From IMG/VR virus record IMGVR_UViG_3300041411_000080, positions 62,001 through 126,000 of that record: a stretch of 64,000 bases of DNA; one strand, given 5' to 3'. Of this stretch, positions 1,447 to 56,719 are shown piece after piece. Below the pieces are notes generated by a model, which was not told where the DNA came from, ran no database searches, and was given only the letters and a program-made list of their open reading frames with translations. The stretch's first letter is position 1; every line of letters starts with the position of its first letter. The position numbers and the translations under genes are program-made.

Positions 1447-1475
1447 CATAAAGCTTCCCCGAAGGGAAGCAGTAT
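1447..1475 (-). terminator. Intrinsic terminator, cUUCGg loop
   Basis: GCTTCCC-CGAA-GGGAAGC at 1453-1470; minus-strand tail TTTATG. Confidence 0.75.
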
Positions 1476-9225: not shown

Positions 9226-9262
9226 AAAAGAAAAGGCATAAAGCCAGTCCCGAAGGACTGGC
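9226..9262 (-). terminator. Intrinsic terminator, cUUCGg loop
   Basis: GCCAGTCC-CGAA-GGACTGGC 9243-9262; minus tail TTTATGCC then T tract. Confidence 0.8.
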
Positions 9263-12277: not shown

Positions 12278-12310
12278 AATAAAACCCTCTCCGAAGAGAG
12301 GGCATTTATG
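12278..12310 (-). terminator. Intrinsic terminator, cUUCGg loop
   Basis: CCCTCTC-CGAA-GAGAGGG 12285-12302. Confidence 0.75.
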
Positions 12311-18428: not shown

Positions 18429-18458
18429 ATGATATAAATCTCAACTTTTTTCTATTGC
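18429..18458 (-). promoter_or_regulatory. Repeated promoter-like motif GCAATAG-N10-AGATTTATATCAT (copy 2)
   Basis: 29/30 identical to 338-367. Confidence 0.6.
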
Positions 18459-18460
18459 GT

Positions 18461-18492
18461 CATAAAGCCTCCCCGAAGGGAGGCAGTATGTC
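18461..18492 (-). terminator. Intrinsic terminator, cUUCGg loop
   Basis: CATAAA-GCCTCCC-CGAA-GGGAGGC-AGTATGTC; near identical to 43887 and 49348. Confidence 0.8.
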
Positions 18493-19099
18493 AGTTACCC
18501 TGCATGGTACCTTCTGTACCTTCGGACGCACGACGTTGGAAACGCTTAGCGATTGCAGCTTGAGCTGCACGAATGTGTTGCAGAACTTCTTCGTTCTCTT
18601 CACAAGCGAACTGGCCTTCTTGGAAGCAGACGTAAGTTTCTTCTACTACTTTAAGCAGGTCTTCGGCAGTAACGCCGTTTACACCCACTTCACTCAGAGG
18701 ACCGCTTTGCAGCAAGATCACACATGCATTCAGGTTATCACCAGCTTCAGCAGCATCGTTAGTCTGTGCATCGAAACCACTGATTACGAAACGCTTAGGA
18801 GCATTCGAACGTGGATCGATAGCGAAGGCTTCAATTACCTTACCACCTTCATCGCCCGATACGATACCAGCTTCGTGATCTTCGATAGAACCCACGATGT
18901 CATGATTGGTATCAGCATTAACTTCATCTCCACCATCGGTGAGAGTTTTGGTTTCGGTATCGCTGTCTTTAACGTCCTTAGGATCAACATCATCGATATC
19001 GATAGAGGACTTTACATTCGTGACGTCTACTACCTGAGCAGTACCGTCTTGTTCGGACTCGAGGCTATTTGCCCAAGCCATAGTTGCAGAAAGACTCAT
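18491..19099 (-). CDS. tad1: Tad1-like cyclic-nucleotide sponge with N-terminal acidic propeptide
   Basis: C-terminal LQSGP..GVNGVTAEDLL..FQEGQFACEEN...H...KRFQRR..GTEGT matches the Tad1 family pattern; AAGGA RBS before ATG 19099. Confidence 0.75.
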   Translation of the reverse strand: MSLSATMAWANSLESEQDGTAQVVDVTNVKSSIDIDDVDPKDVKDSDTETKTLTDGGDEVNADTNHDIVGSIEDHEAGIVSGDEGGKVIEAFAIDPRSNAPKRFVISGFDAQTNDAAEAGDNLNACVILLQSGPLSEVGVNGVTAEDLLKVVEETYVCFQEGQFACEENEEVLQHIRAAQAAIAKRFQRRASEGTEGTMQGN

Positions 19100-19140
19100 T
19101 GGGAATTCCTTGGTTAATGGATTACATAACATAACTGGGA

Positions 19141-19163
19141 ATAAAGTCCTCCCGAAGGAGGAC
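19141..19163 (-). terminator. Intrinsic terminator, cUUCGg loop
   Basis: GTCCTCC-CGAA-GGAGGAC 19146-19163. Confidence 0.75.
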
Positions 19164-20283: not shown

Positions 20284-22305
20284 TTAGAACCGATCAGTGG
20301 TAATTGTAAATGCCGACAGAGTACGTGCAACATCTCCGTCCAAGATCCAAGAAGCAAAGTTGGCAGGAGAGCGCCAAGATTTGAAAGCTTGTACCGAACG
20401 AGTAATGTTAAGGTTCAAACGTTTACCAGCGTAGTAAAGGTCAGAGTAACTCTGAGAGCACAGGGTCGCTACGTAATCGTTGAACAGAGATTGTTCATCC
20501 CATACAGCACCATCTGTTACCGCCAGAGCTGCACCTAGCCCAGCTTCACCACCAACAGCTTCTGCTGCTGTAGCAGTAGCCCACTTAGCACCCGTACCAA
20601 TCCAGCTAGGAGAAGCGAAGCCACCTTTAATAGGAATGTGCATGATCTTCGATAGATCTTTAATTCCGATCGTTACTTCACAACCTAACATGTCGTGGTT
20701 AGCGTTGAAACCTACGTTGCCTGTACCACGACGGATCTGGATAGAGTCAACTATACCCAGCTGACGTTGTACGCGTCCTTTGTGGAAGAGTTGTACGATA
20801 AATGGTGCAGTGTATGCCGATCGACCTGCCGAGCGCGGTAGACCCATTGGAAGGATCATAGCGAGTGGTAGATAGATGTTAAGGAATCGAGAGATTACGT
20901 TACCGTAAGGGGTAATCAAAGGAATCGTGTATTGTGCAGTAGGGAGACTAGCCATAGCTGTATCCCAATACTCAGGTACGTCAACAAACGCAGAACCCGT
21001 AAGTACTGCCAGACCACCTAGGTTCACACTATCCAAAGCACCAGTCGCAAAGTCAAGTAGTCCGCCAGTAACAGCACCTAAACCTTCAGTGATGTTACCA
21101 CCCATGAATTCGAAAGCTTTGTTACGACCTTCACTAACCTTCGTGTTCAACGTTTGGATTACCCCAACGTCTTTAGTCGAGTTAGTAAAGCTTTCGGATA
21201 CCTCACCGTTGTAGTCAGCCCGCAAGGTAACGAATTGTGCACCGTCGTGTTGTGCACCAACGATGTATTTGTACATGTGTGTCAGATCGGACCAACTGGA
21301 GAAGAAGTCGTTATCGATAACCCCGGTCTCATCTTTACTGCCACTGCCTTTCTTATCTTTCTTCAGATAGTCTAAGTAATAAGCTCGTGCATCTTGACCC
21401 GGATTAGGATCGACTACTGCTTGACTCATTGCCTTCTCAGTTGAGTTACGAAGTTCCTCAATAGATCTAGCCTTCTCAGCCATTGCCTTAAATTCACGGT
21501 TTGACGCATCCGCCATTCGTTGAGCACGACCTGCCAGTGCCATTACGTCAACACCGCCATCTGGACGGAACAATTGTGGGAAGATCCGGTGAAGCTCTTT
21601 CATATCTTGCAGAGTACCTTGCGCACCCGGCATGGTACTATCAGCGGTAACCCTTAGTTGTCCTGGGTCAGTACCGGGCGCTGATTCGTTAGCCCAGAAC
21701 CAAGGAGTAATACCGAGACCGATTGCAAATTCGTTTGCAAGGGTGTTAACCGAAGACCAGTAAGTGTGCATGGTCGGTTTAAAGTAGAACCACTTAGAAG
21801 GCTGAGACTTAGTCAAGAAACTAATAACGTTCATTGTACCAGTCAAGCCGAGGATAAACGGCTGTGCCGGCAAAGATACCAACAGACCAGCAGCGTTACC
21901 CAGGTTATACCACAGTCCAGTACCTGCACCAGTGTTGGCCATCGATGCTGCACTACGGTCGTAAAAGTTGGTGAAGAAACTCGACCAGCTACTGAATCGA
22001 GGTACACCGAAAGACATGTGGATTTCTTGCTTAGTATCGTCATGGGCTTCAGAGTAATACCGTCCCATGCCTAGAAATCGGTCTTCATAGCTACGTCCAC
22101 GACCCGGCTGACGAATGTCGCAGTAACGGGTATATTGCGGCAGCATGTTAATTGGGAAGCTACCACCGGGGGACGTATTCGTAAATTTGAATGCGGCAGA
22201 GTTTGCTCTTCGGCGTTTGGTATTGGAACCATAACTGCCTTTTTCATAACTGACTGGAAGCATGAAAGCCTTCCGTAGCCAGATGGGTTGTAAGTCTTCG
22301 GCCAT
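20284..22305 (-). CDS. Tail/baseplate structural protein, phiKZ gp182-like
   Basis: Directly downstream of tape measure gene; 673 aa; synteny. Confidence 0.7.
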
Positions 22306-22357: not shown

Positions 22358-25300
22358 TTACTTCAACGTCAGTGCACTCGGTCTCTGAGCGGCTGAACGG
22401 TTCTGTATGCCAGACGGGGTCATATTATTACCCGATTGCCCTTGAGAACCTCCACCACCTGAACCACCATTACCCGATTTGTTACCAATCTGCTCGAACG
22501 CAACTTTCAAGAAGTCGCGAATCTCATACAACACGTTCAGTTGTTTAGTCTGAACATCGTTTGCTTCGCTAGCAGTTTTCTGTTCGCGACGAACCTCTGC
22601 CTCACGGCGAGCATTCTGAGATTGAGCGGTATCCATCTGAGCTTGACGATTAGCATCAATAGCACCACCGCCAGAATCGGCGCCTTCTGCATTAACACTA
22701 GAACTAGGCGTACTTGAACCGCCACCGGAAGCTGGAGCACCCGGCATTGGAGCAGTATCACTAGCGACAGACGCTACGGTAGGTTGTGCATTGGGAACGT
22801 CCGATGGATCTTGGCCGCTACCACTTTTACCGACACCGTCTTGGTCTTTTGCATCTTCCTTCAGACTTGCCGTGAGTTGTTCCGCATCAGCTTTCGCTGG
22901 CGAGGTTTCAGCTCCCGGAGTTTGTGCTTCAGGTACACCAGATGCAGCAGCACCTTCACTAGACCGATATCCCTTACCGGTAGTTGCCCAGAACTTCTCA
23001 ATCTTCTTCTGGAACATTTGGTACATCTCGGAGATAGTCCGAGGTTGAGATGGTCGTCCACCCACAAAGAACAGAGGCATGTTCGCAGAGTATTCTTTCT
23101 TGAAGATCTTGTAGCCGTAGGCATTAGGATCAGCACGAAGGAATTTCAATGCACCGCCGAGACCCAAGAAGTGAGCCATGTACACATCGGTATCAGTGAT
23201 GTTATCGCGACCCAATCCTTTCTTCAGTCCTTCCCAGTTATCCCGAGTGAACTGTGCACCGAGCAATGCGTTGATCCGAGGATCGTTACGAGCTGCCCGA
23301 GACTTGCTAGGATCAGGTGGGAGACCGAACAGCTTAATCCCCTTAGCGTACATCATGTCCCATGTACTATCGATGAATTGGAACCAGCCAGTAGCCGAAC
23401 TCGTAGCAGCTTTAACGGTGTACCGGAAACCGGACTCCAAGCCAACGATAGCCAACAGCCAATCCAATGGAACACCCGTCATTCCAGATACAGCTTTAAG
23501 TGTAGGCAAAGCATCGCGGATAGAACCACTCGATGCAGGCATCGGAATAGCTTCCCACTTACCGCCATTACCCGCAGTTACAGTACCCTTGTTACCAGCG
23601 GACTGAATTGCACCACCTTTAGCCTTACCATCCCCACCGTAGTCGGCACCCATACCCAAAGCCATCTTGGCACTAGCGGCAGTATCACCAATAGCGTCAG
23701 CAGCATTGTTCAAAGTAGTAGAGACCGTTTCCTTCGTGGATTCCCAAGTATCTTTAATACCGGAGATTACGTTGTCTACGAAACTACCACCTTTATCAGC
23801 AGCATTCTTACCTGCTACTTGGTCAGATGCTTTCTGAGTAGGTGTACCAACAGCTTCCTTCTCAGCTTCTTTCTGCAACGATACGAGATCAGCGTCAGCC
23901 AGTTTCTTCAGGTCTTTAGGATTACCCTTAATTTCGAACAACGAAGGTTGATCCCAAACAGAGCGAGCGAAACCATCCACTGCACCCAGCATGGCGTTAG
24001 CCACAGAAACCTTTTCACTAGCCTTAAGCTTAGACTCCAAGCCGGACAGGTTCGCCGATGGTTGAGCACGCAATGCAGTGCCGTAGTAAGCACGGAACAC
24101 TGGAGCAAAACGGTTGGTCAACCAGCCATGCAGTTCGTAACGGTCGTCAGCACCAATAGTAGTGTCTTTACCAAACAACTGACCAGCTTCCTTCAACAGG
24201 GCACCGGCATCACCACTATAGTCAACACTGTATTCACTAACCTGCAAGTCTTTCGCATAGAAAGCTTCCAGAGCCAGTGCGGCCTTAACGTTGGTTACTG
24301 TCAAGAACTCCATACCGTACGCACGCATACGGATTGCTTGAAGGGCAGTTAGAGTACGACCGATCTTAGCGCTGAGGTCAGCGATGGTACCACTCAATGT
24401 ACCAGCAGCAGCCGTAGCTGCAACACCAGCACCTGCGCCCGGAGTATTAAAGGTATCAGCTTTTGCTTTATCTGCTTTATTAGCTTCATCGGCTAATTTC
24501 TGAGCAGCAGACATTGCACCTGCCCCCGTAGCAACAGCGCCAGTAGTGGCAGCAGCTGTAGTACCAGCAGCAGCACCTTCCTTCTTGACCGTCATCTCTT
24601 CGCCAGGCTTACCAGTAGCAGCCTTAGCTTCCGCTTCCTTCTTCTTAAGACCGTACTTCTCTTTTAATGTGTCGAACATCTTAGAGATTACGTCCATGTT
24701 GTTAGGGAGTGGATAGCTAGGAGCGAATGGGTTATCCGTTACCCCGTATGGCGAATCGTTGTTGTAAGGGAATCGAATGGTTTCCAAGAAATCGCCTTTC
24801 AGCTCTTCTGGAACTTTGTCATCGACTTCGTTGATGTTAACCGAACCTTGACCGATCTTCTGCAAACCTGCAATCCACTGGAGGTAGACTGGTTTAAAGC
24901 GCTTCTGCATCCAACGAGCGAATACCATTACGGATTCTTCATCTTCTAGGTCAATGCCCATGATGTTAAGCGTTTCAGTTGCAGCTTCAGGAGGTAGAGT
25001 AAACCCAGGCTTTTCACTATCTTTGGTTGTGTATTTCTCAAGTAAGCCCTCAAGCTTAAGAACCTTGACCTTATCACCACCCAGACTGAACATGCTCAGG
25101 GACGTGATCGAATCGATCAGACCTTTCTCAACAGGTTTATCAACACCATACTGAGCCAGACGCAGTTCACGGAATTCACCGGAGATATCCTTGTAACGAT
25201 TGTAGCCCAAGTAAGCAGCACCTGCGGTCACAGCAATAGCTGCACCAGCAATCAGTACCGGCGCACTCAACAGACCAGCAATAGCTGTACCTGCCATCAT

Positions 25301-28300
25301 AGCACCACGAGCGAGCAATGAACCACCCATTCGACCGATCAGTTGACCACCCTTAGAGCTGGCCATACGACTTGCCATTTTACCAAGGCGTCCACCACCC
25401 ATCCGTCCAAGCTTCCCAGCTTTACGGTTACGGCGACGTTCATTGTGGTCACCAACAGCATCACCGATGTCAGCAATGTCTGCCACATCGCTCAGGATAC
25501 CACCGTCATCATCGTCTTCCTCTTCGGACTCGTCCTTCTTCTTACCGAGACCGAGCATACCTGCAATACCAGCCAGGCCACGCTTGAAGAAACCACCCTT
25601 CTTGTCTTCTGCTTTGGCTTGAGCCTCTTCCGATTCTTCCTCAGTCGCTTTCTTCGCATCCTTGTCTTGCCAGCTACCCTTACGGATTTCTTTAGGACGT
25701 TGTTCACGAAGTTCGTTAAGGATTTCTTGGAGACCTTCGACTACAGGCTGGTTAGCCATCGATGCACCGGCAGCCGTAGCTTCCATAGCACCACGTTGCT
25801 CTTCAGGGATCTTCTCGAACATCTTGCTGAGGATATTACCACCAGCCTTAGAGAATCCACCGAGTGTCTTCTTACCAGCCCAAGCACCTACAGCCATAGT
25901 CTTCTTACCAAGCCACTTGTAGTAGTTCTTGGTTGCCCGACCATAGGCATTACGAAGTGCCCGCATAGGACGCATTACGAGCTTACCCCAGATACGCTTG
26001 TTCTTCGCCAACACGTGACGAGTACCATCGTAGTTCTTAAGTAGCTTATATTGCTCAGCAGGAATAACTGGTTCACCTTTAGCGTCATGGATAATGGAGT
26101 ACACATCCACAAAGTCTTCGATTACTTGACCCTTGTCGTCATAGTACTCACCGTTCTGCAAAGCACGACGAGTCAAGACTGGGATACGGTCACCTTCCAG
26201 ATAGGCGTTCTGGTTATCAGCGATAATGTTGAACAAACGAGAGCCAATACCGAGTGCAGCTTTACCCATGAACTTGGCGGCGCCCCACGCAATATTGCCT
26301 GTGGATTGACCAGAGAACTTGGCAGCTTTACCTACACCGCGCAACAACTTAGCAAAGCCTTTAGTTGGGCGATAACGAGTACCTGTACGACGAGACCACA
26401 ATCCGTTAGCGAATTCTTTAGCACTGATAACCAAGTTACCAGATCTATCGAATACGTCACTAGCGATTTCCTTGATCGAGGTTACCACTTTACCAGCAGC
26501 ATCGTAGTATTCACCGCTAGCCAGACCACGAGCTGTGATGACAGGGTCTTCACCCGGCCCCAGAGCCCAATCCTGACTGTTTAGCTTCTCATCCGAGTTA
26601 GGATCAGCAGCCTCACTTGATTCAACGCCACCGAGCTTAGGCTCGCTCTTAGCAATAGCCTCAGCAACCTTACTGTTAGCTTGAGAATCAACCTTAAGGA
26701 CAATGTCGCCGTTAGCATTCATCAAACCGGCAGCCAGTTCGTTAGCTGACAACATTACGTCGCCATTGGCGTTGATCAACTTACCGGTAATGTCACTGAG
26801 TTTGGTCACAACCTTTTTGGTGTTGTAATCGATCAGCGAACCATTGGTGAAATCCCTAACCCGAATAGCTGGGTAGTTCTTATCGAACTTGGTGTACAGG
26901 TCGGTGATTACTTCATCCGAACGGTTAGCCATTTTACTGGCGCCGTCATTTACAACGTCAGAAGCTTTAGCGGTAAACTGGTTAAACCCAGCCAGACCGG
27001 CATCGAGCATACCCGACATCTGACCTTTATACTGGCCCGACAGCATCGCACCATAACCACCTGCCGCAGCAGCTTGTTGCTGCATGTTAGCAAAGTGACC
27101 CGGAATACCGTTAGCGAAACCTTGTACGTGAGCAGCAGCGGCACCGAAGCGACCACGCATACCCTTCAGTTCTTTAGCCATCCGATCACGGGCAGCTTGT
27201 TCTTCAGGGCTATACTTGGTGCGTAGACGACGAGCAGCATTCAAACCACGAGTGGCAGCATCAGGAACAGTAGGACCCATGAAGTCACGGTGACCCGACT
27301 CACCCGAGCGATCATCCCGATAAGGATCATCACCATTACCACCTGGACCATACGGGTTGTGATCAGTTACACCACCACGCAGGATTTCCCAGATACGCGG
27401 ATAGTTGATCTTATCGAAACCGTCTTCAGTAATAATGATCCCGATTGCACGCAAAGGTTCAGTATGACCGGAATCGATCATCTTCTGAATTTCTTTGATT
27501 GGGTCACGAGAGATACTACGGATATCCAAGAAGACTTGGGAGAACTCTTGACGCAGTTTATGGTTGTCTGCGTTATCAGCCATCTTACCATCGGAGTCCA
27601 TCTTGAACTTGCTATTAAAGAACCCTTCGAGTTCCTTAGCTACTTCAGGAGGCATGTCCTTGGCATAACCCTTCGACTTGATATAAGCCTCTGGATCAAA
27701 GCGACGGTTAGTGGAAGCATCTCGAAGCATACGTTCAGCCAAAGCCTTACGTGCTTGTGGGCTAAGCTTACCATCTTCATCCATCGTGTTGAGTGCATCG
27801 TTAATAGTAGTCGATGCAGAACGGATAGCGTTCTTAGGAACGATCTTGTTCTGAAGGTTGTCATGAGCTGTAGTTTCCAGCGTAAACTTACCTGTAGTTG
27901 CATCAAATACTTCACGACCTACGTCTTCACTACCAGTCTTGATCTGACGAAGCGTTTGGAGAATCCGAGCCAAATAGCCGGGGATTGCATCAACGATCGT
28001 ACGCTGCGTCATTTGGTTAAACTGCGCAGCTTGGTCAATTGTTTGATAGTTCGAACCATTGGTACGATCTTGGAGACCGAACTGGGGAACATAAGGGGCG
28101 ATCATATTACGGATCTTGCCTTTCATCCCATGCGAGTTCTGGTTGTTGTTAACAAACTCCTGCAAGAACGCAGGCATGTTATCCAAGTAGTAACCGATCT
28201 GGTTATGCTTACCACCCATGTGCTTGTTAGACAAGTTAGTCAAGCCAGGACGAGCTTCACGACCCAACATCGGGATCAGTTGATCCATGATGAAGTCGCC

Positions 28301-29449
28301 CGCAGCACCACCAGCGAACTGGCCGGCCATCTTGTACTTGTCCTTCCACATGTTGCCACCAGAACCTTCACCCATCTTCATCGCCATTACGGCTAAGCTG
28401 AGTTTCTGGCTCATGTCACTGGTGATCTTACCCTGTGCGTTTCCACCGTAGTCACCGAGGAAGTGAGAAAGAGTTTTGCTAGCTGCTTTCTGAGCAATGC
28501 CGCCAACAAAGCCCTGTCTTGCTCCAGCCTTACCCATCGTCCCAAGGTCATTACGACCATTCTTCTGGAAGTCGGTCATACCGGTGTTACGAATCATCGC
28601 ATTGAAAGCCTGAGCATTCAGCTCAAGGTTAGCTTCCTGTAATTTGATGAGTTCCTTAATACCGATATAGCTACGGAATTGGAGTTCCAGACCTTTACGT
28701 TGGAACCCGTAGTTAACCTGTGTGTTATACCCATTAAGTTGTTGAAGATTGTCAACCGCCATACCCATGGCTTTAGCGGTAAAATCAAATCGTTTGGTTT
28801 TGAGAAGATCACGAACACTGTTCTCAGCACGCATTTGGTTATGACGTGCTTGGGCACCTTGCTCGGCCCGGTTATGGTTCACTTTACCCGAGAGGGCAAT
28901 GTTGTCCAACGCCGTTTCGATATCACTGGTGTCTTTACGATCTTGAGCAGCACGACGGATTGCAGTCTGATCACGCTGAGACTGAATCGTGTAGTCATAC
29001 TCGTCAATCTTATTCTCTAGACCCTGACTAATGTCATTGTAAAGACCCTTAGGTGCGTATTCTTCAAGCTTAGGCAAAAGAGCCTGTGCTCGTTTAGCGA
29101 TGTATTTTAAGTCAGACGCGTTAGTACGCTCGAGAGAGTCTTTGATATCCCGAGATGCGCTTACAGCCTCATCGGCAAAGCCCATCAGGTTAGAGATACC
29201 ATCAGGAGCAGCCGAGCGTAAAAAGTTTCTGACAACATCTTTAGTACGAATGCGATCGCTGAATGATTCTTTAATCCCTTCCCAGACTTCGCTGAGTGGT
29301 CCACTCTTACCTGAAGAATCACTCTCCAGTGGACCAAACATATCGTCGAAATCTCCAAGGTCGAGAACCATTGGACCGCCCGATACTTTGATGTTTCCCT
29401 GACCGTCGGTCCCTTTAGGAGCGGCGATGGGAATAGTCTTTTTAGCCAT
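22358..29449 (-). CDS. Tape measure protein with C-terminal lytic transglycosylase domain, phiKZ gp181-like
   Basis: 2363 aa, Ala/Gly/Lys-rich; SLT motifs LAIVGLESG, ATGWFQFIDSTW, YMAHFLG; divergent from RNAP genes. Confidence 0.9.
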   Translation of the reverse strand: MAKKTIPIAAPKGTDGQGNIKVSGGPMVLDLGDFDDMFGPLESDSSGKSGPLSEVWEGIKESFSDRIRTKDVVRNFLRSAAPDGISNLMGFADEAVSASRDIKDSLERTNASDLKYIAKRAQALLPKLEEYAPKGLYNDISQGLENKIDEYDYTIQSQRDQTAIRRAAQDRKDTSDIETALDNIALSGKVNHNRAEQGAQARHNQMRAENSVRDLLKTKRFDFTAKAMGMAVDNLQQLNGYNTQVNYGFQRKGLELQFRSYIGIKELIKLQEANLELNAQAFNAMIRNTGMTDFQKNGRNDLGTMGKAGARQGFVGGIAQKAASKTLSHFLGDYGGNAQGKITSDMSQKLSLAVMAMKMGEGSGGNMWKDKYKMAGQFAGGAAGDFIMDQLIPMLGREARPGLTNLSNKHMGGKHNQIGYYLDNMPAFLQEFVNNNQNSHGMKGKIRNMIAPYVPQFGLQDRTNGSNYQTIDQAAQFNQMTQRTIVDAIPGYLARILQTLRQIKTGSEDVGREVFDATTGKFTLETTAHDNLQNKIVPKNAIRSASTTINDALNTMDEDGKLSPQARKALAERMLRDASTNRRFDPEAYIKSKGYAKDMPPEVAKELEGFFNSKFKMDSDGKMADNADNHKLRQEFSQVFLDIRSISRDPIKEIQKMIDSGHTEPLRAIGIIITEDGFDKINYPRIWEILRGGVTDHNPYGPGGNGDDPYRDDRSGESGHRDFMGPTVPDAATRGLNAARRLRTKYSPEEQAARDRMAKELKGMRGRFGAAAAHVQGFANGIPGHFANMQQQAAAAGGYGAMLSGQYKGQMSGMLDAGLAGFNQFTAKASDVVNDGASKMANRSDEVITDLYTKFDKNYPAIRVRDFTNGSLIDYNTKKVVTKLSDITGKLINANGDVMLSANELAAGLMNANGDIVLKVDSQANSKVAEAIAKSEPKLGGVESSEAADPNSDEKLNSQDWALGPGEDPVITARGLASGEYYDAAGKVVTSIKEIASDVFDRSGNLVISAKEFANGLWSRRTGTRYRPTKGFAKLLRGVGKAAKFSGQSTGNIAWGAAKFMGKAALGIGSRLFNIIADNQNAYLEGDRIPVLTRRALQNGEYYDDKGQVIEDFVDVYSIIHDAKGEPVIPAEQYKLLKNYDGTRHVLAKNKRIWGKLVMRPMRALRNAYGRATKNYYKWLGKKTMAVGAWAGKKTLGGFSKAGGNILSKMFEKIPEEQRGAMEATAAGASMANQPVVEGLQEILNELREQRPKEIRKGSWQDKDAKKATEEESEEAQAKAEDKKGGFFKRGLAGIAGMLGLGKKKDESEEEDDDDGGILSDVADIADIGDAVGDHNERRRNRKAGKLGRMGGGRLGKMASRMASSKGGQLIGRMGGSLLARGAMMAGTAIAGLLSAPVLIAGAAIAVTAGAAYLGYNRYKDISGEFRELRLAQYGVDKPVEKGLIDSITSLSMFSLGGDKVKVLKLEGLLEKYTTKDSEKPGFTLPPEAATETLNIMGIDLEDEESVMVFARWMQKRFKPVYLQWIAGLQKIGQGSVNINEVDDKVPEELKGDFLETIRFPYNNDSPYGVTDNPFAPSYPLPNNMDVISKMFDTLKEKYGLKKKEAEAKAATGKPGEEMTVKKEGAAAGTTAAATTGAVATGAGAMSAAQKLADEANKADKAKADTFNTPGAGAGVAATAAAGTLSGTIADLSAKIGRTLTALQAIRMRAYGMEFLTVTNVKAALALEAFYAKDLQVSEYSVDYSGDAGALLKEAGQLFGKDTTIGADDRYELHGWLTNRFAPVFRAYYGTALRAQPSANLSGLESKLKASEKVSVANAMLGAVDGFARSVWDQPSLFEIKGNPKDLKKLADADLVSLQKEAEKEAVGTPTQKASDQVAGKNAADKGGSFVDNVISGIKDTWESTKETVSTTLNNAADAIGDTAASAKMALGMGADYGGDGKAKGGAIQSAGNKGTVTAGNGGKWEAIPMPASSGSIRDALPTLKAVSGMTGVPLDWLLAIVGLESGFRYTVKAATSSATGWFQFIDSTWDMMYAKGIKLFGLPPDPSKSRAARNDPRINALLGAQFTRDNWEGLKKGLGRDNITDTDVYMAHFLGLGGALKFLRADPNAYGYKIFKKEYSANMPLFFVGGRPSQPRTISEMYQMFQKKIEKFWATTGKGYRSSEGAAASGVPEAQTPGAETSPAKADAEQLTASLKEDAKDQDGVGKSGSGQDPSDVPNAQPTVASVASDTAPMPGAPASGGGSSTPSSSVNAEGADSGGGAIDANRQAQMDTAQSQNARREAEVRREQKTASEANDVQTKQLNVLYEIRDFLKVAFEQIGNKSGNGGSGGGGSQGQSGNNMTPSGIQNRSAAQRPSALTLK

Positions 29450-38912: not shown

Positions 38913-39632
38913 ATGAACACACCAAATCTGATTCGTGATGCTGACTTTGTACTTAGTCGGCTTTCAGAAGAGTCTGATGGAAGTGTCGTTACTACTGTTC
39001 CATGCACGGTACAGATCCCAGAAAGTTTTGCAGCTAAGAACCTTGCTGTTATCGGCAGTGAGGTTTTTATCTTTGGTTTCTTCCCGATCATCATGGGTGA
39101 CCGATATGCTGTAAACAAAGCTATCGCAATGATGCGGATCTGTCCTAGCTCTACGCAGAAGATCGTAGTTAACGAGACACCATACATCGAGTTCCAGTTT
39201 GAAGCTGGTGACACACTAATCTACACAACTGCTCTGGTTGTGACGGATACACTTAGTTACTACATGTACGACGAGTTCATTGCTAAAGGGAATATCCCTT
39301 GGTACATGGATTACTTTGACATGGCAAATATGTTCGACACAGCAAAAGAGCATGCCGGGGTTGACCTCGGTGGTCGTTCGATTATCGAGTTGATTATTTC
39401 AACTATCGCTCGAGATCCGAATGATATGACTCGGCTGTATCGGCACATCCTTGCACGCCCGGAAGACCTCAGGCTTAAACCCCCTGTTACGGTTCCCTTC
39501 CGTTCTGTTATTTGGAACACTTCCGATACAACGTCTAAACTAAACGGCGCTTACTACGATCACGGTATCAACTCAGCTTTGGTTAACCAATCTGAGTCTG
39601 TTGAAATGCTCGAGGAACTGCTCCGAACTTAA
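38913..39632 (+). CDS. Virion RNA polymerase beta' C-terminal subunit, phiKZ gp176-like
   Basis: Directly upstream of protease; C-terminal NTS...SKL-x-GAY segment; synteny. Confidence 0.7.
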   Translation: MNTPNLIRDADFVLSRLSEESDGSVVTTVPCTVQIPESFAAKNLAVIGSEVFIFGFFPIIMGDRYAVNKAIAMMRICPSSTQKIVVNETPYIEFQFEAGDTLIYTTALVVTDTLSYYMYDEFIAKGNIPWYMDYFDMANMFDTAKEHAGVDLGGRSIIELIISTIARDPNDMTRLYRHILARPEDLRLKPPVTVPFRSVIWNTSDTTSKLNGAYYDHGINSALVNQSESVEMLEELLRT

Positions 39633-39645
39633 TTGGAAGTGGCAT

Positions 39646-40515
39646 ATGAACCTAGGTATTATCCGAGGGAGAACGATCCCTAACCCATCTGGCCAAGTAC
39701 CTCTGTCTCAGACAGCGGTTACTGTTGGCTGTGCAATGCTGGCTGGTACTAATAAGCGAGGCATCCTACCTGCGGATGCCAGCGGTTACTACACTCTCGT
39801 AGTGGGTAGCTATGGTACACATAACTCAGCTGGTATGTTTTATGATGAAGCATCTGGCTGTGCAATGTTTGAGCCTTCGAGTTCTTTGATGAGACGTCTT
39901 AAGAAAGGCGTGTTGTTCATGGAGTTCAAACACCCTGAACCATTCCAAGATCTGATGATCGATGGTCGGGTTGTCCGCAGACCAATGTCGGATGCTGAGT
40001 ACCTGATGCGCATTCGTCAAATCGACGATAACCGTGTATGTGCACACATTCGTAATCTGACTATCGTTGATGGTATTAACGAACAGGGTAAACCAGTTAA
40101 GATGGTCGTGGCTGAAGTTAAGCCTTACGGTCCATACGCTAAAGTCTTCCAAGACTCTCTGGATAACCCAAGCATCAACACTTACTGCTCGGTTCGTTCG
40201 ATCACTCAAGACGATCAATACCGTGGCATTAAGTACACTCGTGAAATCGCTACTTGGGACTTCGTGGGTGAAGGTGGTATCTTTACCGCTAACAAATATA
40301 CTTCTCCTGGACTGGAGAACTATACTGCTGAAGAAGCAATGATTATCCCTGAACGTCAGATCACACCAGACGTACTTTGGAAGATCCAAGATGACAACCA
40401 AAAGCGAACCTTGCTTGGGTTGGAATCTGCTGAACACCGTGATGTATCGGAGCTGATCAAGATTCTTGATTGGGATCGGTCTAAAGGTGTTCGTCGTCCT
40501 AACTACCTCCGTTAA
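39646..40515 (+). CDS. Prohead (head maturation) serine protease, phiKZ gp175-like
   Basis: EFKHP (His), CSVRS (Ser), TWDFV motifs; start revised to MNLGII. Confidence 0.85.
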   Translation: MNLGIIRGRTIPNPSGQVPLSQTAVTVGCAMLAGTNKRGILPADASGYYTLVVGSYGTHNSAGMFYDEASGCAMFEPSSSLMRRLKKGVLFMEFKHPEPFQDLMIDGRVVRRPMSDAEYLMRIRQIDDNRVCAHIRNLTIVDGINEQGKPVKMVVAEVKPYGPYAKVFQDSLDNPSINTYCSVRSITQDDQYRGIKYTREIATWDFVGEGGIFTANKYTSPGLENYTAEEAMIIPERQITPDVLWKIQDDNQKRTLLGLESAEHRDVSELIKILDWDRSKGVRRPNYLR

Positions 40516-42442: not shown

Positions 42443-42469
42443 ATAAAAGCCCCCTCCGAAGAGGGGGCT
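42443..42469 (-). terminator. Intrinsic terminator, cUUCGg loop
   Basis: AGCCCCCTC-CGAA-GAGGGGGCT 42448-42469. Confidence 0.75.
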
Positions 42470-43886: not shown

Positions 43887-43917
43887 CATAAAAGCCTCCC
43901 CGAAGGGAGGCTATGTC
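43887..43917 (-). terminator. Intrinsic terminator, cUUCGg loop
   Basis: GCCTCCC-CGAA-GGGAGGC with CATAAAA and TATGTC flanks. Confidence 0.8.
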
Positions 43918-45096: not shown

Positions 45097-45136
45097 AAAA
45101 AAGAAAGGACATAAAATGGGGCACCGAAGTGCCCCA
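45097..45136 (-). terminator. Intrinsic terminator, cUUCGg loop
   Basis: TGGGGCAC-CGAA-GTGCCCCA 45117-45136; tail TTTTATGTCC then T tract. Confidence 0.8.
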
Positions 45137-49347: not shown

Positions 49348-49379
49348 CATAAAGCCTCCCCGAAGGGAGGCAGTATGTC
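49348..49379 (-). terminator. Intrinsic terminator, cUUCGg loop
   Basis: Identical over 32 nt to 18461-18492. Confidence 0.8.
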
Positions 49380-53681: not shown

Positions 53682-54878
53682 TTACACACCAGTTGTTTCG
53701 TAGTGATCGATACAGTGGTTGATGAAGGTAAGCCAAACACTCAGAGTAATAGCCAGCCAGTGAGTGAAGTTATCCAATGGCTCAGCGAGCTTCTTGGAGA
53801 TCTCCCCTGTGATCTGGAGTACAAGGTTAGAGGCTGGAACGGTTTCACCCGAATCAGTCTTTTCCATGATCTGACGAATGGAATCATCTACTACTGTTTT
53901 AACCGTATCGAAATCCCGACGACCAGCTTCAGCTTTCTCAGCCAGAGTCAGTACACGAGAGATCTCTTCTGTCAACAGAGTCAAGTCCCGAACAGAGGGA
54001 ACATCGATTTCGCGTTCAGAGCGGTCAGCTACGTTCAACTGAAGTTCAGTGAAGTGCATGATAAAGCTAGAACTTACGATATCTGCCGGATCAGTCTTAC
54101 CACGACGCAAAGCTTCAGTCATGCCTTCTGGAGACATATAAACGAAGGCTCTGTTACCAGCCAGTACATCACTACGACGATGGTTCTTCTTATCGAGTCC
54201 ACTCATCTCTCCCGATTTAACTTCAGTAGCACCCGGTGGAGCACGGAAGTTAGTTTGGAATACATCAATGAATGTTTCGATTACATCGTGTGCAGTTTGC
54301 TGACGTTCTTGACCTTCAGCGTTTTCGAGAATGTTAAGGAACTTACGACTGCAATTACGAGCGATCTGCGTTACGCTCTTTGGATAGATGTTCAGGCAAT
54401 AGTTGGTGAGTTGCTTGATGTCCTCAATGGCACTTTGCTCCACACCTACGAACTTACCGTCTACCGACAAGCGTTGTACACCTGCTACCGCCATCGTAGA
54501 TTGAAGTGAGGTCTTAGACCCCAGCTTACCCAAACGACGAATAGTGGACTCTTGGCTACGACGTACCCGACGGATACTACCCGTAAACTTAATGTACATC
54601 GCGTTAAGGAATTGCCAGATCTGTTTAATGATCTTCCATGCTGCACTTGCCCCAGCAGAGATGGCTTCCTTAATTGCACGCAATGTAATGGCACCACCCT
54701 CTTTGATATCGAACTCAGGGTCGATGTTCTCAAGAGCAGTACTCATTACAAATGCGATGTCGTCACTCGCTCTTTCCTGTCCAGCTAGGAGTTGTTCATA
54801 GCGTTCCAAGGATTGAGTGAGTCGTACCACCTTGTCCCAATTCTCAAGCAAAGGCTTCAATTCAGATGTTGGGTTCAT
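53682..54878 (-). CDS. Inner-body/head protein, phiKZ gp163-like paralog family
   Basis: STALE cleavage-like site; V-x-G-x-x-RL-x-x-x-x-x-FVG and L-x-GN-x-A motifs shared with neighbour. Confidence 0.7.
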   Translation of the reverse strand: MNPTSELKPLLENWDKVVRLTQSLERYEQLLAGQERASDDIAFVMSTALENIDPEFDIKEGGAITLRAIKEAISAGASAAWKIIKQIWQFLNAMYIKFTGSIRRVRRSQESTIRRLGKLGSKTSLQSTMAVAGVQRLSVDGKFVGVEQSAIEDIKQLTNYCLNIYPKSVTQIARNCSRKFLNILENAEGQERQQTAHDVIETFIDVFQTNFRAPPGATEVKSGEMSGLDKKNHRRSDVLAGNRAFVYMSPEGMTEALRRGKTDPADIVSSSFIMHFTELQLNVADRSEREIDVPSVRDLTLLTEEISRVLTLAEKAEAGRRDFDTVKTVVDDSIRQIMEKTDSGETVPASNLVLQITGEISKKLAEPLDNFTHWLAITLSVWLTFINHCIDHYETTGV

Positions 54879-54892
54879 GTGGTACTTCCTTA

Positions 54893-56719
54893 TTAAGCGT
54901 CGATGGTATTGCCAGCAGCTTCCGCCTTGAGCGAAGCTTCAAGGAAACCAATGTAAGCTTTGATCATGTTGATCAGGTAACCCAAGAAACGATGTTGCGA
55001 TTCAGTAGAGGTCTTAGCCAGATTCATCACCATGATACCAGCAACTTGACCTTCAGCACCACCAGAACCGGTGAACAGATCCATGAACGCGTCTTGGTTA
55101 GCACCCTGAGTGAACTTCTTCAGTTCACGCATGCCATCTTTAGAATCCTGGATGAATTGGCAGAGTTTCTCCAGCTCACGGATTACCGATACAGCTTCAC
55201 CAGCCGATGGAGTAGTTACAGGAGTGTCGCTCGAACGCGAGTCACCACCTGGGATCAGGCTGAAGTTCAGAGTTACAGCGTTCTGAGCATCTTCCATCGA
55301 ACCTTCGACGCCAGCTTTACCCGAGTTAGCGATGCCAGCGTAAAGAGCCATGTTACCAGGCATTGGACCGGTCCAATGCAGACGATCTACACCCAAGAAG
55401 CCAGACGGTACTTTGTCTTTGTCACCGGAGTTCAGTTGATCGAAGCTACGGAAGGCACGGTCAAGTGCGGTATCCAAGCCACCGATAACAGCACCCATTG
55501 CAGCGCCACCATTACCACCGAAGATACCACGACCTTTCTCCCAGTCTTGGATAATCTTAGCGAGGCTATTAGGCCAGTTCATCAGAAGTTCTTGGGAGAC
55601 CTTATGCACTTGGGCAATAGCCTTCGAAGAGTCACCTACGAACTCATCGCCAATCATCAGACGACCAGGGTTCTTCATGGTGAATTCTTTATCACCTTCA
55701 AGAACGTTAACACGTTTACGCAGGTCAACCAAGTGCTGCTTGATCTTACCAGTGTCGGTAGCCAAGGAAGCGATCAGGTCGGAAACCATGTTAACCATAC
55801 GCCAGAAAATCTTAACGCCGGCTTTAAACATTTCTTTGAGCTTGCCACCAAGACCTTTGGATACTTCACCTGGATCTGCGCCGTCATCAATAGTACCGGA
55901 CTTACCAGCACCAACTGCACCTACAGCGTTAGCTTCCAGAGATACACGTGCTTCTGGGTTAAACGATTCCAGAGCAACACGTTCACGAAGGAACATCTGC
56001 GAGTCGATATCTTCCAGTGCCCACGAGATCGATTGACGGAGTTCATCCGACATATAACGACCTTCGTTATGCATACGTACCATCAGACCGTGATATTTCT
56101 CAACAGTAGCGGTAGCTTTGCTCAGGGATTCAGCTTTAGCAGCAACCGAGTCTACTTCAGCCAGCTTCGATTCAGCTGCATCGGTCATACCGGTAACTTG
56201 CAGTTCTTCACCGTCAAGGTCCATAACCAGATCGTCAGCTTTCTCGATCTCTTCAGCGCCCGAGGCGTCGATGGATTTCAGTTCGGTGGATTCAGCGTTG
56301 TCACCACCTTCTTCCTCTTCACCCGAGTGTTCTTCTACCGAAGTAGAGATGTCACTCTTAGACAGACCGTCTTTGGCTTTGACATCGTTAGGCAGGGTGT
56401 CGATATCACGACCACCGTTCTGATCACGATTCAGGTTTTCGTTGACGTCACTAACGTCCATCGAAGTAGTAGCAGTCTTAACGTCTACAGTTTGAGCGGT
56501 ACCATCACCACCACCATTCTCAGGACCGGGTTCGGTAGTCTTGGTGTTGGTAGCATCAGCTTTCGGCAGGTCGTCTGCTTCCAGTGGCTTAGGATCGTTG
56601 GTGGCGTTGGATGGGATGTCTTTAGAAGCGTCCAGTGCAACGTTATCTACGTTGGCGGTGGAAATGCTTTCTTTGGAAACAATGGAGTTAACCATTTCGA
56701 AAATACTTAGGCGAGCCAT
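54893..56719 (-). CDS. Inner-body/head protein, phiKZ gp162-like, with long acidic propeptide
   Basis: Acidic N-terminal region with S/A-x-E sites (SKE, SVE, ALE, SLE); paralogous to 53682..54878. Confidence 0.75.
   Translation of the reverse strand: MARLSIFEMVNSIVSKESISTANVDNVALDASKDIPSNATNDPKPLEADDLPKADATNTKTTEPGPENGGGDGTAQTVDVKTATTSMDVSDVNENLNRDQNGGRDIDTLPNDVKAKDGLSKSDISTSVEEHSGEEEEGGDNAESTELKSIDASGAEEIEKADDLVMDLDGEELQVTGMTDAAESKLAEVDSVAAKAESLSKATATVEKYHGLMVRMHNEGRYMSDELRQSISWALEDIDSQMFLRERVALESFNPEARVSLEANAVGAVGAGKSGTIDDGADPGEVSKGLGGKLKEMFKAGVKIFWRMVNMVSDLIASLATDTGKIKQHLVDLRKRVNVLEGDKEFTMKNPGRLMIGDEFVGDSSKAIAQVHKVSQELLMNWPNSLAKIIQDWEKGRGIFGGNGGAAMGAVIGGLDTALDRAFRSFDQLNSGDKDKVPSGFLGVDRLHWTGPMPGNMALYAGIANSGKAGVEGSMEDAQNAVTLNFSLIPGGDSRSSDTPVTTPSAGEAVSVIRELEKLCQFIQDSKDGMRELKKFTQGANQDAFMDLFTGSGGAEGQVAGIMVMNLAKTSTESQHRFLGYLINMIKAYIGFLEASLKAEAAGNTIDA

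What the first reader, a model, noticed from the sequence alone, without database searches (positions are those of the whole stretch)
18491..19099. Tad1-like immune-signal sponge fused to a virion-type propeptide: candidate packaged, injected anti-Thoeris/anti-CBASS protein
Seen: the C-terminal ~110 aa read VILLQSGPLSEVGVNGVTAEDLLKVVEETYVCFQEGQFACEENEEVLQHIRAAQAAIAKRFQRRASEGTEGT, with F170, N180, R197 and R201 (ORF-track numbering) spaced 10, 17 and 4 residues apart. Recalled knowledge: Tad1 sponges bind gcADPR and several CBASS cyclic nucleotides, and the cbTad1 ligand residues F82/N92/R109/R113 have the same spacing. Standard Tad1 is ~125 aa, but this one has an ~85-aa acidic N-terminal extension containing S-x-E sites (SLE, SIE) like those cut by the gp175-type protease. 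Inference: the sponge is loaded into the head, matured by the protease and delivered with the DNA. That would counter signalling defences, which the phage nucleus cannot block physically. Related phages may already have a reported Tad1; I cannot check this.
Basis: partly seen in the sequence, partly recalled or inferred. Interest (0 to 1): 0.9.

Follow-up and report, generated by a model that had tools for sequence, protein, structure and literature searches.

The report
Packaged Tad1 immune-signal sponge orthologue

Summary
Window 18491-19099 (minus strand) encodes a 202-aa protein. Residues about 75-202 are a Tad1 domain: E 3.5e-8 to CmTad1, canonical Tad1 PHROG 2e-21, and the top 20 Foldseek PDB hits are all Tad1.

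The acidic N-terminal extension carries two conserved S/A/G-x-E motifs, at residues 12-14 (47/47) and 71-73 (45/47). A gp175-type head maturation protease is encoded 20 kb away.

The protein is the syntenic orthologue of 201phi2-1 gp280 (67% identity, found in virions by mass spectrometry) and phiKZ gp184. The literature already describes gp184 as Tad1, a gp175-cleaved minor capsid protein and an injected protein.

This is a new member of a known kind, and interest is low. One small open point concerns the chimallivirus clade. It lacks the arginine that contacts the gcADPR ribose linkage, and the window protein also lacks both cyclic-trinucleotide contacts, so its ligand range may be narrower. 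Packaging, cleavage sites and binding were not tested for this phage.

The parts
18491..19099 (-). Complete CDS (202 aa plus stop): chimallivirus-type Tad1, orthologue of phiKZ gp184 and 201phi2-1 gp280
   Evidence: ORF and translation. phrog_23843 matches full length at 7e-87. tblastn gives 67% identity to 201phi2-1 and 53% to the phiKZ gp184 C-terminal part. Synteny is kept.
19106..19111 (-). AAGGAA ribosome-binding site 6 nt upstream of the ATG
   Evidence: Read from the upstream sequence. The start at 19099 agrees with M1 being invariant in 47 orthologues.
19058..19099 (-). Residues 1-14: conserved N-terminal segment (W9, A10, then S/G-x-E ending at E14). It is the candidate first head-protease site and possible head-targeting segment.
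   Evidence: E14 is invariant and the [S/G]-x-E motif is present in 47/47 orthologues. AF2 predicts a helix at 3-15 with low confidence. This is the only stretch of the extension still alignable to phiKZ gp184 (BLASTP E 0.051).
18881..19057 (-). Residues 15-73: acidic, predicted-disordered linker ending in S-I-E (71-73), the candidate second head-protease site just before the Tad1 fold
   Evidence: Residues 1-73 have a net charge of -14. pLDDT is below 50 for 16-25, 27-34 and 44-78. The [S/A]-x-E motif at this position is present in 45/47 orthologues, while the other two N-terminal motifs are in 24/47 and 13/47.
18494..18880 (-). Residues 74-202 (129 aa): Tad1 domain, a beta-sheet plus a two-helix hairpin, the size of a free-standing Tad1
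   Evidence: AF2 elements are E77-81, E87-94, E101-107, E125-130, H145-161 and H167-193, with pLDDT 77-90 over most of the domain. Foldseek matches CbTad1 and CmTad1 with TM (target-normalised) 0.60-0.75. phmmer aligns residues 97-199 to CmTad1. Precomputed PF24729 Acb2_Tad1_hairpin hits exist on the 95%-identical relatives.
18530..18625 (-). Codons of the ligand-pocket residues F159 (18623-18625), F164, N169 (18593-18595), R186 (18542-18544) and R190 (18530-18532)
   Evidence: They align with cbTad1 F82, F87, N92, R109 and R113 (residue roles). N, R and R are 47/47 in orthologues, and F159 is F in 32 and Y in 15. All are near-universal in 150 family representatives.
19146..19163 (-). Upstream G+C-rich hairpin with a UUCG loop and a TTTAT tail, terminator-like, separating the gene from the upstream ORF
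   Evidence: Terminator-like call; hairpin census.
18467..18484 (-). Downstream hairpin of the same type, 7 nt after the stop codon
   Evidence: Hairpin census; sequence read.
39601..40515 (+). Head maturation protease gene (gp175-type), the presumed processing enzyme. The true start may lie downstream of the listed TTG.
   Evidence: phrog_3014 'head maturation protease' at E 3.6e-84, matching residues 38-290.

Best explanation
The gene encodes the 201phi2-1/phiKZ-type Tad1 of a phiKZ-like nucleus-forming (chimallivirus-type) phage that is not in the phage collection searched.

The C-terminal 129 residues form a Tad1 sponge domain. It keeps the pocket that in cbTad1 sandwiches the adenine (F82/R109), reads its Hoogsteen edge (N92) and binds the diphosphate (R109/R113). 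So it most likely sequesters Thoeris gcADPR and/or CBASS cyclic dinucleotides.

The acidic N-terminal 73 residues are a virion-incorporation and processing module. The protein is loaded into the prohead late in infection. The gp175-type head protease, encoded in the same window, most likely cuts after E73 and perhaps after E14. The freed sponge of about 14 kDa is then ejected with the DNA into the next host. It is therefore present before any phage gene is expressed, and it acts on a diffusible signal that the phage nucleus cannot exclude.

Shown here:
- Tad1 homology and predicted fold.
- Conserved pocket residues.
- Orthology and synteny with gp184 and gp280.
- Conserved S/A/G-x-E motifs.
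- A head protease gene in the window.

Taken from the literature on the orthologues: virion presence, cleavage, capsid location, injection and anti-defence activity.

Inferred: that all of this applies to this phage, and which motifs are actually cut.
For: Tad1 homology:
- phmmer against PDB gives gp184 (8y6v_I) 2.4e-34, CmTad1 3.5e-8 and cbTad1 2e-3.
- PHROGs give 23843, 22140 and 2428.
- The AF2 model and Foldseek return 20 of 20 top hits as Tad1, probability 1.00, with a cliff to E 0.46.
- BFVD hits are Acb2/Tad1 hairpin proteins.

Ligand pocket:
- The equivalents of G55, F82, F87, N92, R109, R113 and G120 are kept (residue roles).

Orthology:
- 67% full-length identity to 201phi2-1 gp280, whose record says 'identified using mass spectrometry; similar to phiKZ gp184'.
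- Same gene order: tail lysin, gp182-like gene, small ORFs, Tad1.
- One supported clade (SH-like 97) holds the window protein, gp280, gp184, PhiPA3, Phabio and the metagenomic N-extended forms.

Processing module:
- S/G-x-E at 12-14 in 47/47 and S/A-x-E at 71-73 in 45/47 orthologues, inside an otherwise variable region.
- Cutting after E73 leaves 129 aa, the size of free-standing Tad1 (124-132 aa chains).
- A head protease gene lies in the window.

Literature on gp184:
- Cleaved by gp175 and located on the inner capsid vertex complex.
- Injected.
- Named Tad1, with the C-terminus liberated by the head protease and injected.
Against: - No experiment or proteome exists for this phage, so packaging is by homology only.
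- The N-terminal extension is barely alignable to that of gp184 (E 0.051, first ~40 residues only).
- The window protein lacks the ~45-residue insert that gp184 carries between the acidic region and the Tad1 domain. If that insert is the capsid-bound beta-strand piece seen in 8Y6V, the mode of attachment could differ. Foldseek gave no match to 8y6v_I.
- I could not read the experimentally mapped gp184 cleavage site: Thomas et al. 2012 is not held, and no supplement to the capsid paper is held. The two proposed cut sites therefore rest on conservation alone.
- S/A/G-x-E is a short motif that is common in acidic sequence.
- Some cbTad1 ligand contacts are not kept: R57->L135, R78->T155, and the cyclic-trinucleotide contacts R90->E167 and T97->Q174.
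- The local Pfam and NCBIfam scans gave no hit.
Confidence: 0.85

Rival explanations
1. It is mainly a structural minor capsid protein that helps cement the capsid vertex. On this view the Tad1-like domain is retained for structural reasons rather than as a working sponge.
For: Yang et al. place gp184 in the vertex-binding complex. It fills a gap between gp86 and a major capsid protein subunit, and they discuss it as a stabiliser.
Against: - The ligand-pocket residues N169, R186 and R190 are invariant in 47 orthologues and near-universal across 150 family representatives. A purely structural role would not require this.
- phiKZ orf184 tolerates transposon insertion and is non-essential, with a competitive index near wild type.
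- gp184 is injected.
- The two roles are not exclusive. The extension may stay in the capsid while the sponge leaves.
Confidence: 0.07
2. It is a working Tad1 sponge that is only made in the cytoplasm in this phage lineage. The acidic extension would then be a disordered tail with some other role, such as solubility, regulation or localisation, and the protein is not packaged.
For: - The extension is predicted to be disordered.
- It lacks the phiKZ-specific insert.
- It shows only marginal similarity to the gp184 extension.
- About a third of the top family representatives carry unrelated N-terminal extensions, so extensions as such are common in this family.
Against: - 201phi2-1 gp280 has the same insert-less architecture at 67% identity and was detected by mass spectrometry in the virion proteome project.
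- The two protease-type motifs are conserved in 47/47 and 45/47 orthologues while their surroundings vary.
- The extension-bearing forms are one clade that includes the experimentally packaged gp184.
Confidence: 0.06
3. The match is to the broader Acb2/Tad1 hairpin superfamily, and the protein works as an Acb2-like CBASS sponge rather than as Tad1.
For: The only Pfam label on close relatives is the shared PF24729 Acb2_Tad1_hairpin, and it is marked weak.
Against: - All significant PDB sequence hits and the 20 best structural hits are Tad1. No Acb2 chain appeared in the PDB sequence search at E up to 10, nor among the 50 Foldseek rows shown of 183 matches at E up to 10.
- The alignment covers the N-terminal beta-sheet of Tad1 as well as the hairpin (residues 97-199 against CmTad1).
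Confidence: 0.02

Closest known systems
Pseudomonas phage phiKZ gp184 (Tad1; PDB 8Y6V chain I)
   Same: - The C-terminal 121 residues are 53% identical.
- Same genomic position downstream of the tail lysin and gp182.
- Same clade.
- Same N-terminal W..S-L-E-S start and an S/A-x-E motif ahead of the Tad1 domain.
- gp184 is known to be cleaved by gp175, capsid-associated, injected and anti-Thoeris/anti-CBASS.
   Different: - gp184 is 230 aa. It carries an insert of about 45 residues between the acidic region and the Tad1 domain that the window protein lacks.
- The rest of the extension is not significantly similar.
- F159 is Y in gp184.
Pseudomonas phage 201phi2-1 gp280
   Same: This is the nearest named relative. 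It shows 67% identity over the full length and the same 199-202 aa insert-less architecture, motifs and synteny. Its record notes detection by mass spectrometry.
   Different: It is annotated only as a hypothetical protein similar to phiKZ gp184. I found no functional study. DNA identity to the window is too low for megablast.
Free-standing Tad1 (cbTad1 7UAV/7UAW/8SMD; CmTad1 8KBB-8KBD)
   Same: - Same fold: beta-sheet plus two helices, TM 0.60-0.75.
- Same core pocket residues: F82, F87, N92, R109, R113, G55 and G120.
- The same size once the extension is removed.
   Different: - No N-terminal extension.
- The cyclic-trinucleotide contacts, cbTad1 R90/T97 (CmTad1 R88/T95), are E167/Q174 here.
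- R78 is T155 and R57 is L135.
- The CmTad1 hexamer-interface residues Q98/E99/M102/W103 align with R177/A178/A181/A182, by my own position count on the alignment printed (residue roles).
- Only about 25% identity.
T4 internal proteins with a capsid-targeting sequence cut by the gp21 prohead protease (from general knowledge, not tested here)
   Same: The logic is the same. A short N-terminal signal directs a cargo into the prohead, a head protease removes it at an x-E site, and the cargo is injected to counter a host defence.
   Different: It is an unrelated sequence and an unrelated protease family member. The extension here is much longer and acidic. No other ORF in this window carries the same N-terminal motif.

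Membership tests
Tad1 (Thoeris anti-defence 1) sponge family | Significant sequence homology to characterised Tad1 proteins | tested here: met
   phmmer gives E 3.5e-8 to CmTad1 (8kbb_A) and 2e-3 to cbTad1. phrog_2428 matches at 2.1e-21. 2068 family representatives are found at E<=1e-3.
Tad1 (Thoeris anti-defence 1) sponge family | Fold: an N-terminal antiparallel beta-sheet followed by two long C-terminal helices | tested here: met
   The AF2 model has four strands and helices at 145-161 and 167-193, with domain pLDDT mostly 77-90. The Foldseek top 20 are all Tad1, probability 1.00, TM (target-normalised) 0.60-0.75. This is a predicted model, not a solved structure.
Tad1 (Thoeris anti-defence 1) sponge family | gcADPR / cyclic-dinucleotide pocket residues (cbTad1 F82, F87, N92, R109, R113, G55, G120; also R57, R78) | tested here: met
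   F159, F164, N169, R186, R190, G133 and G197 are kept. R57->L135, as in most representatives. R78->T155 is a clade-specific loss: it is R in 136/142 other representatives and hydrophobic in all 8 close chimallivirus-type representatives.
Tad1 (Thoeris anti-defence 1) sponge family | Cyclic-trinucleotide pocket (cbTad1 R90 and T97; CmTad1 R88 and T95) | tested here: not met
   The aligned residues are E167 and Q174. These columns are variable across the family, and R is found in only 10/142 other representatives. This is therefore not a family-defining feature, but it predicts weak or no cA3 binding.
Tad1 (Thoeris anti-defence 1) sponge family | Hexamer (trimer of dimers) | not testable with these tools
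   Only single-chain prediction is available. The CmTad1 interface residues are not conserved, by my own position count on the alignment printed (residue roles).
Tad1 (Thoeris anti-defence 1) sponge family | Binds and sequesters gcADPR and/or CBASS nucleotides, and rescues phage from Thoeris/CBASS | not testable with these tools
   This needs binding assays and plating. It is reported for the orthologue phiKZ gp184 (citing Li et al. 2024, which is not held).
phiKZ gp184-type packaged Tad1 of chimalliviruses | Orthology and conserved gene position | tested here: met
   The window protein falls in one clade with gp184 (SH-like 97). The gene order of tail lysin, gp182-like gene and Tad1 is shared.
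phiKZ gp184-type packaged Tad1 of chimalliviruses | N-terminal extension with S/A/G-x-E head-protease motifs, and a gp175-type protease in the genome | tested here: met
   The motifs are conserved in 47/47 and 45/47 orthologues. The protease gene lies at 39601-40515. Actual cleavage was not tested.
phiKZ gp184-type packaged Tad1 of chimalliviruses | Presence in the virion, proteolytic processing, and injection into the host | not testable with these tools
   This is known for gp184. For gp280 there is detection by mass spectrometry only. No data exist for this phage.

The most novel reading that the evidence does not exclude
The chimallivirus Tad1 clade, including this protein, may have a retuned and narrower ligand range than the Clostridium Tad1 proteins.

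All clade members replace the arginine that holds the gcADPR ribose-ribose linkage (cbTad1 R78) with a hydrophobic or threonine residue. The window protein has E167 and Q174 in place of the two cyclic-trinucleotide contacts, and the E at position 167 is shared by the six named phage orthologues.

The packaged sponge might therefore not soak up cA3, and might favour cyclic dinucleotides or a signal not yet assigned to Tad1.

This fits a published result for phiKZ. Among 1,500 arrayed transposon mutants of non-essential genes, only an nlp1 insertion made phiKZ sensitive to cAAA/NucC CBASS. Adding Acb2 rescued that nlp1 mutant, even though the mutant still carried tad1.
Probability: 0.3. Interest if true: 0.35.

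Novelty: new member of a known kind. Interest (0 to 1): 0.2.

Why it matters
The value here is mainly in annotation. Orthologues in 201phi2-1, Viktualia, Phabio, PhiPA3 and dozens of metagenomic contigs are still labelled hypothetical. They can be named packaged Tad1 sponges.

The alignment also gives two concrete candidate protease sites (after E14 and E73) and a predicted mature sponge of 129 aa.

It shows that the packaged-sponge architecture is a single conserved clade across phiKZ-like phages, not a peculiarity of phiKZ.

The concept itself is already published for phiKZ: an anti-signalling sponge delivered with the DNA, which complements the phage nucleus.

Tried and rejected
- **Family scans.** The local Pfam scan of the full protein, the C-terminal domain, a 95% relative, gp184 and gp280 gave only noise. 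The precomputed tables nevertheless list a weak PF24729 Acb2_Tad1_hairpin hit for the relatives. NCBIfam gave nothing.
- **Source phage.** Megablast of 3 kb around the gene found only a 100-nt, 85% match to Phabio, so the source phage is not in the phage collection.
- **Papers I could not read.** Li et al. 2024 (Nature), which reports phiKZ Tad1, is not held, and its 2023 preprint does not mention phiKZ. Thomas et al. 2012, with the mapped gp184 cleavage site, is not held. No supplement of the capsid paper is held.
- **Shared packaging signal.** I looked for a common signal by scanning every ORF start of at least 90 aa in the window for the N-terminal W..[SAG]-x-E motif. Only this gene has it. 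I therefore dropped the idea of a generic targeting sequence shared with the neighbouring head proteins.
- **Capsid-bound fragment.** Foldseek did not retrieve the capsid-bound gp184 fragment (8y6v_I). I could not tell which part of gp184 is anchored, or whether the window protein has that part.
- **Opposite strand.** The 220-aa ORF at 18455-19117 on the plus strand has no support and is a shadow of the real gene.
- **Second structure job.** I ran no further search on gp184. Sequences from annotated-record loci are not accepted by that tool, and a capsid-context beta fragment is unlikely to fold on its own.

Full report
**The sequence.** The finding sits on a minus-strand ORF at 18491-19099. 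It translates to 202 residues. The ATG at 19099 is preceded by AAGGAA. It aligns with the invariant M1 of 47 orthologues. The quoted C-terminal peptide is there.

**Is it Tad1?** Yes.
- A sequence search of all PDB chains gave phiKZ gp184 (8y6v_I, E 2.4e-34, residues 82-202) as the best hit. CmTad1 followed (8kbb_A, E 3.5e-8, residues 97-199), then cbTad1 chains (E 2e-3).
- PHROGs gave a full-length family (phrog_23843, 7e-87), the gp184 family (phrog_22140, 1e-34) and the 131-aa canonical Tad1 family (phrog_2428, 2e-21).
- An AlphaFold2 model built on 41 homologues has a confident C-terminal domain: four strands and two long helices, with pLDDT 77-90 over most of it. The N-terminus is disordered apart from a weak helix at 3-15.
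- Foldseek against the PDB returned 20 Tad1 chains (CbTad1 and CmTad1, apo and ligand-bound) at probability 1.00 and target-normalised TM 0.60-0.75. The next hit is at E 0.46. No Acb2 chain appeared in the PDB sequence search or among the 50 Foldseek rows shown.
- BFVD gave Acb2/Tad1 hairpin proteins.
- Close relatives carry a weak precomputed PF24729 Acb2_Tad1_hairpin hit. The local Pfam and NCBIfam scans were empty.

**Ligand residues.** Leavitt et al. describe cbTad1 F82 and R109 stacking the adenine and N92 reading its Hoogsteen edge. R57, R109 and R113 hold the diphosphate and F87 buttresses the ribose. H29, G55, R78 and N122 hold the ribose-ribose linkage, and G120 makes a backbone contact to the diphosphate. 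Li et al. add that F82, N92, R109 and R113 also bind 2'3'-cGAMP, and that cyclic trinucleotides sit in a separate pocket made by cbTad1 R90/T97, which are CmTad1 R88/T95.

Through the HMMER alignment, these residues map as follows.

| cbTad1 residue | Window residue | Kept? |
|---|---|---|
| F82 | F159 | yes |
| F87 | F164 | yes |
| N92 | N169 | yes |
| R109 | R186 | yes |
| R113 | R190 | yes |
| G55 | G133 | yes |
| G120 | G197 | yes |
| R57 | L135 | no |
| R78 | T155 | no |
| R90 (trinucleotide pocket) | E167 | no |
| T97 (trinucleotide pocket) | Q174 | no |

- In 47 orthologues N169, R186 and R190 are invariant, and F159 is F or Y.
- In the 150 best representatives of a 1.84-billion-protein library, the seven kept positions are near-universal. 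The R78 position is R in 136/142 other representatives but T/V/I/L in the window protein and in all eight chimallivirus-type representatives. The two trinucleotide positions are variable.
- The adenine/diphosphate core is therefore intact. The linkage-specific contact and the trinucleotide contacts are not.

**The extension.** An alignment with 201phi2-1, Viktualia, Phabio, PhiPA3, PA1C and phiKZ, and one with 47 orthologues, show a variable acidic region with two fixed points.
- An [S/G]-x-E ending at E14 is present in 47/47 orthologues. It follows a conserved W9-A10.
- An [S/A]-x-E ending at about E73 is present in 45/47. It lies directly before the first strand of the Tad1 fold.
- The other two S/A/G-x-E motifs in the extension are present in only 24/47 and 13/47.
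- Cutting after E73 would leave 129 residues, the size of a free-standing Tad1.

Against phiKZ gp184 the extension is only marginally similar (E 0.051, first ~40 residues). gp184 also has an extra ~45 residues that the window protein lacks. No other ORF in the window starts with the same motif.

**Context.** The window is a typical phiKZ-like segment. It holds:
- a gp181-type tail lysin (22358-29449) and a gp182-type protein (20284-22305);
- virion RNA polymerase subunits;
- internal head proteins;
- a thymidylate kinase;
- a head maturation protease at 39601-40515 (phrog_3014, 3.6e-84).

The order of tail lysin, gp182-like gene, small ORFs and Tad1 matches 201phi2-1 (gp276, gp277, gp280) and phiKZ (gp181, gp182, gp184). 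The nearest named protein is 201phi2-1 gp280 at 67% identity. Its record says 'identified using mass spectrometry; similar to phiKZ gp184'. At the DNA level nothing in the phage collection is close. Metagenomic contigs encode 95%-identical proteins in the same context. A FastTree of the domain places the window protein, these phages and the metagenomic N-extended forms in one clade (SH-like 97) within a family that is otherwise mostly free-standing.

**What is already known.**
- Yang et al. 2024 resolve part of gp184 on the inner capsid surface, in the vertex-binding complex. They state that gp184 is cleaved by the gp175 head protease.
- Fossati et al. 2023 validated gp184 as an injected protein by western blot.
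- Chan et al. 2025 call orf184 tad1. [quoted passage not shown] It cites Li et al. 2024, which I could not read.

**Mechanism and its limits.** The best-supported reading (0.85) is a late-made, head-packaged sponge that is protease-matured and injected, and that acts on adenine-containing immune signals.
- Shown here: homology, predicted fold, pocket conservation, orthology, conserved motifs and a protease gene.
- Inferred: packaging in this phage, the two cut sites, and the ligands.
- Unresolved: which part of gp184 is capsid-bound, and whether this shorter protein has it. Foldseek gave no 8y6v_I match.

**A side observation worth a test.** The clade's loss of R78, and the E167/Q174 of the window protein (E167 shared by the six named phage orthologues), suggest weak or no cA3 binding. 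That fits the report that, among 1,500 arrayed phiKZ mutants, only nlp1 became sensitive to cAAA/NucC CBASS. It also fits the rescue of that mutant by Acb2 even though the phage still carried tad1. This is indirect evidence.

**Verdict.** The finding is a new member of a known kind, and interest is low (0.2).

Noticed in passing
window 1453-1470, 9243-9262, 12285-12302, 18467-18484, 19146-19163, 42448-42469, 43893-43912, 45117-45136, 49354-49371 (all minus strand): Recurrent intergenic G+C-rich hairpins have 7-9 bp stems and a UUCG tetraloop, and each is followed by TTTAT(G). Two of them bracket the Tad1 gene. They look like terminators. From memory only, the TATG that follows several of them resembles the phiKZ late-promoter motif.
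   Followed up: partly
window 39601-40515 (+): A head maturation protease of the gp175 type (phrog_3014, 3.6e-84) lies next to a virion structural protein at 38913-39632. The listed TTG start is probably too far upstream, because the profile match begins at residue 38.
   Followed up: partly
whole window; L007-L009: The source phage has no close DNA relative in the 50,697-record phage collection; the best match is 85% over 100 nt to Phabio. Logan assemblies SRR15674899, SRR15675014 and SRR15675013 carry 95%-identical Tad1 genes in the same gene order.
   Followed up: partly
BFVD hits A0A7R8MJE9 (Klebsiella phage vB_KvM-Eowyn, 145 aa) and A0A6B7ZEW3 (Klebsiella phage N1M2, 141 aa): Short Tad1-fold proteins occur in Klebsiella phages. 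The Eowyn protein is annotated 'Structural protein', which hints that virion packaging of Tad1 may not be limited to phiKZ-like phages.
   Followed up: no
proteins P0075 (136 aa) and P0102 (143 aa), sister group of the chimallivirus clade: These short relatives start with a similar W-L-E motif (for example an ALEWLEE-like start) placed almost directly on the Tad1 domain, without the long acidic linker. They could be a minimal form of the same N-terminal signal.
   Followed up: no
L007 9110-9772; Phabio gp274 in L004 (2825 onward): A small protein (220 aa in L007) with a PhiKZ_MCP domain hit, annotated 'major head protein' in Phabio, is encoded a few genes downstream of Tad1. It may be a short paralogue or fragment of the major capsid protein.
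   Followed up: no
window 53682-54878 and 54893-56719 (-): Two adjacent paralogous internal head proteins (both phrog_8282) are the likely counterparts of the phiKZ inner-body proteins that are also cut by the head protease.
   Followed up: no
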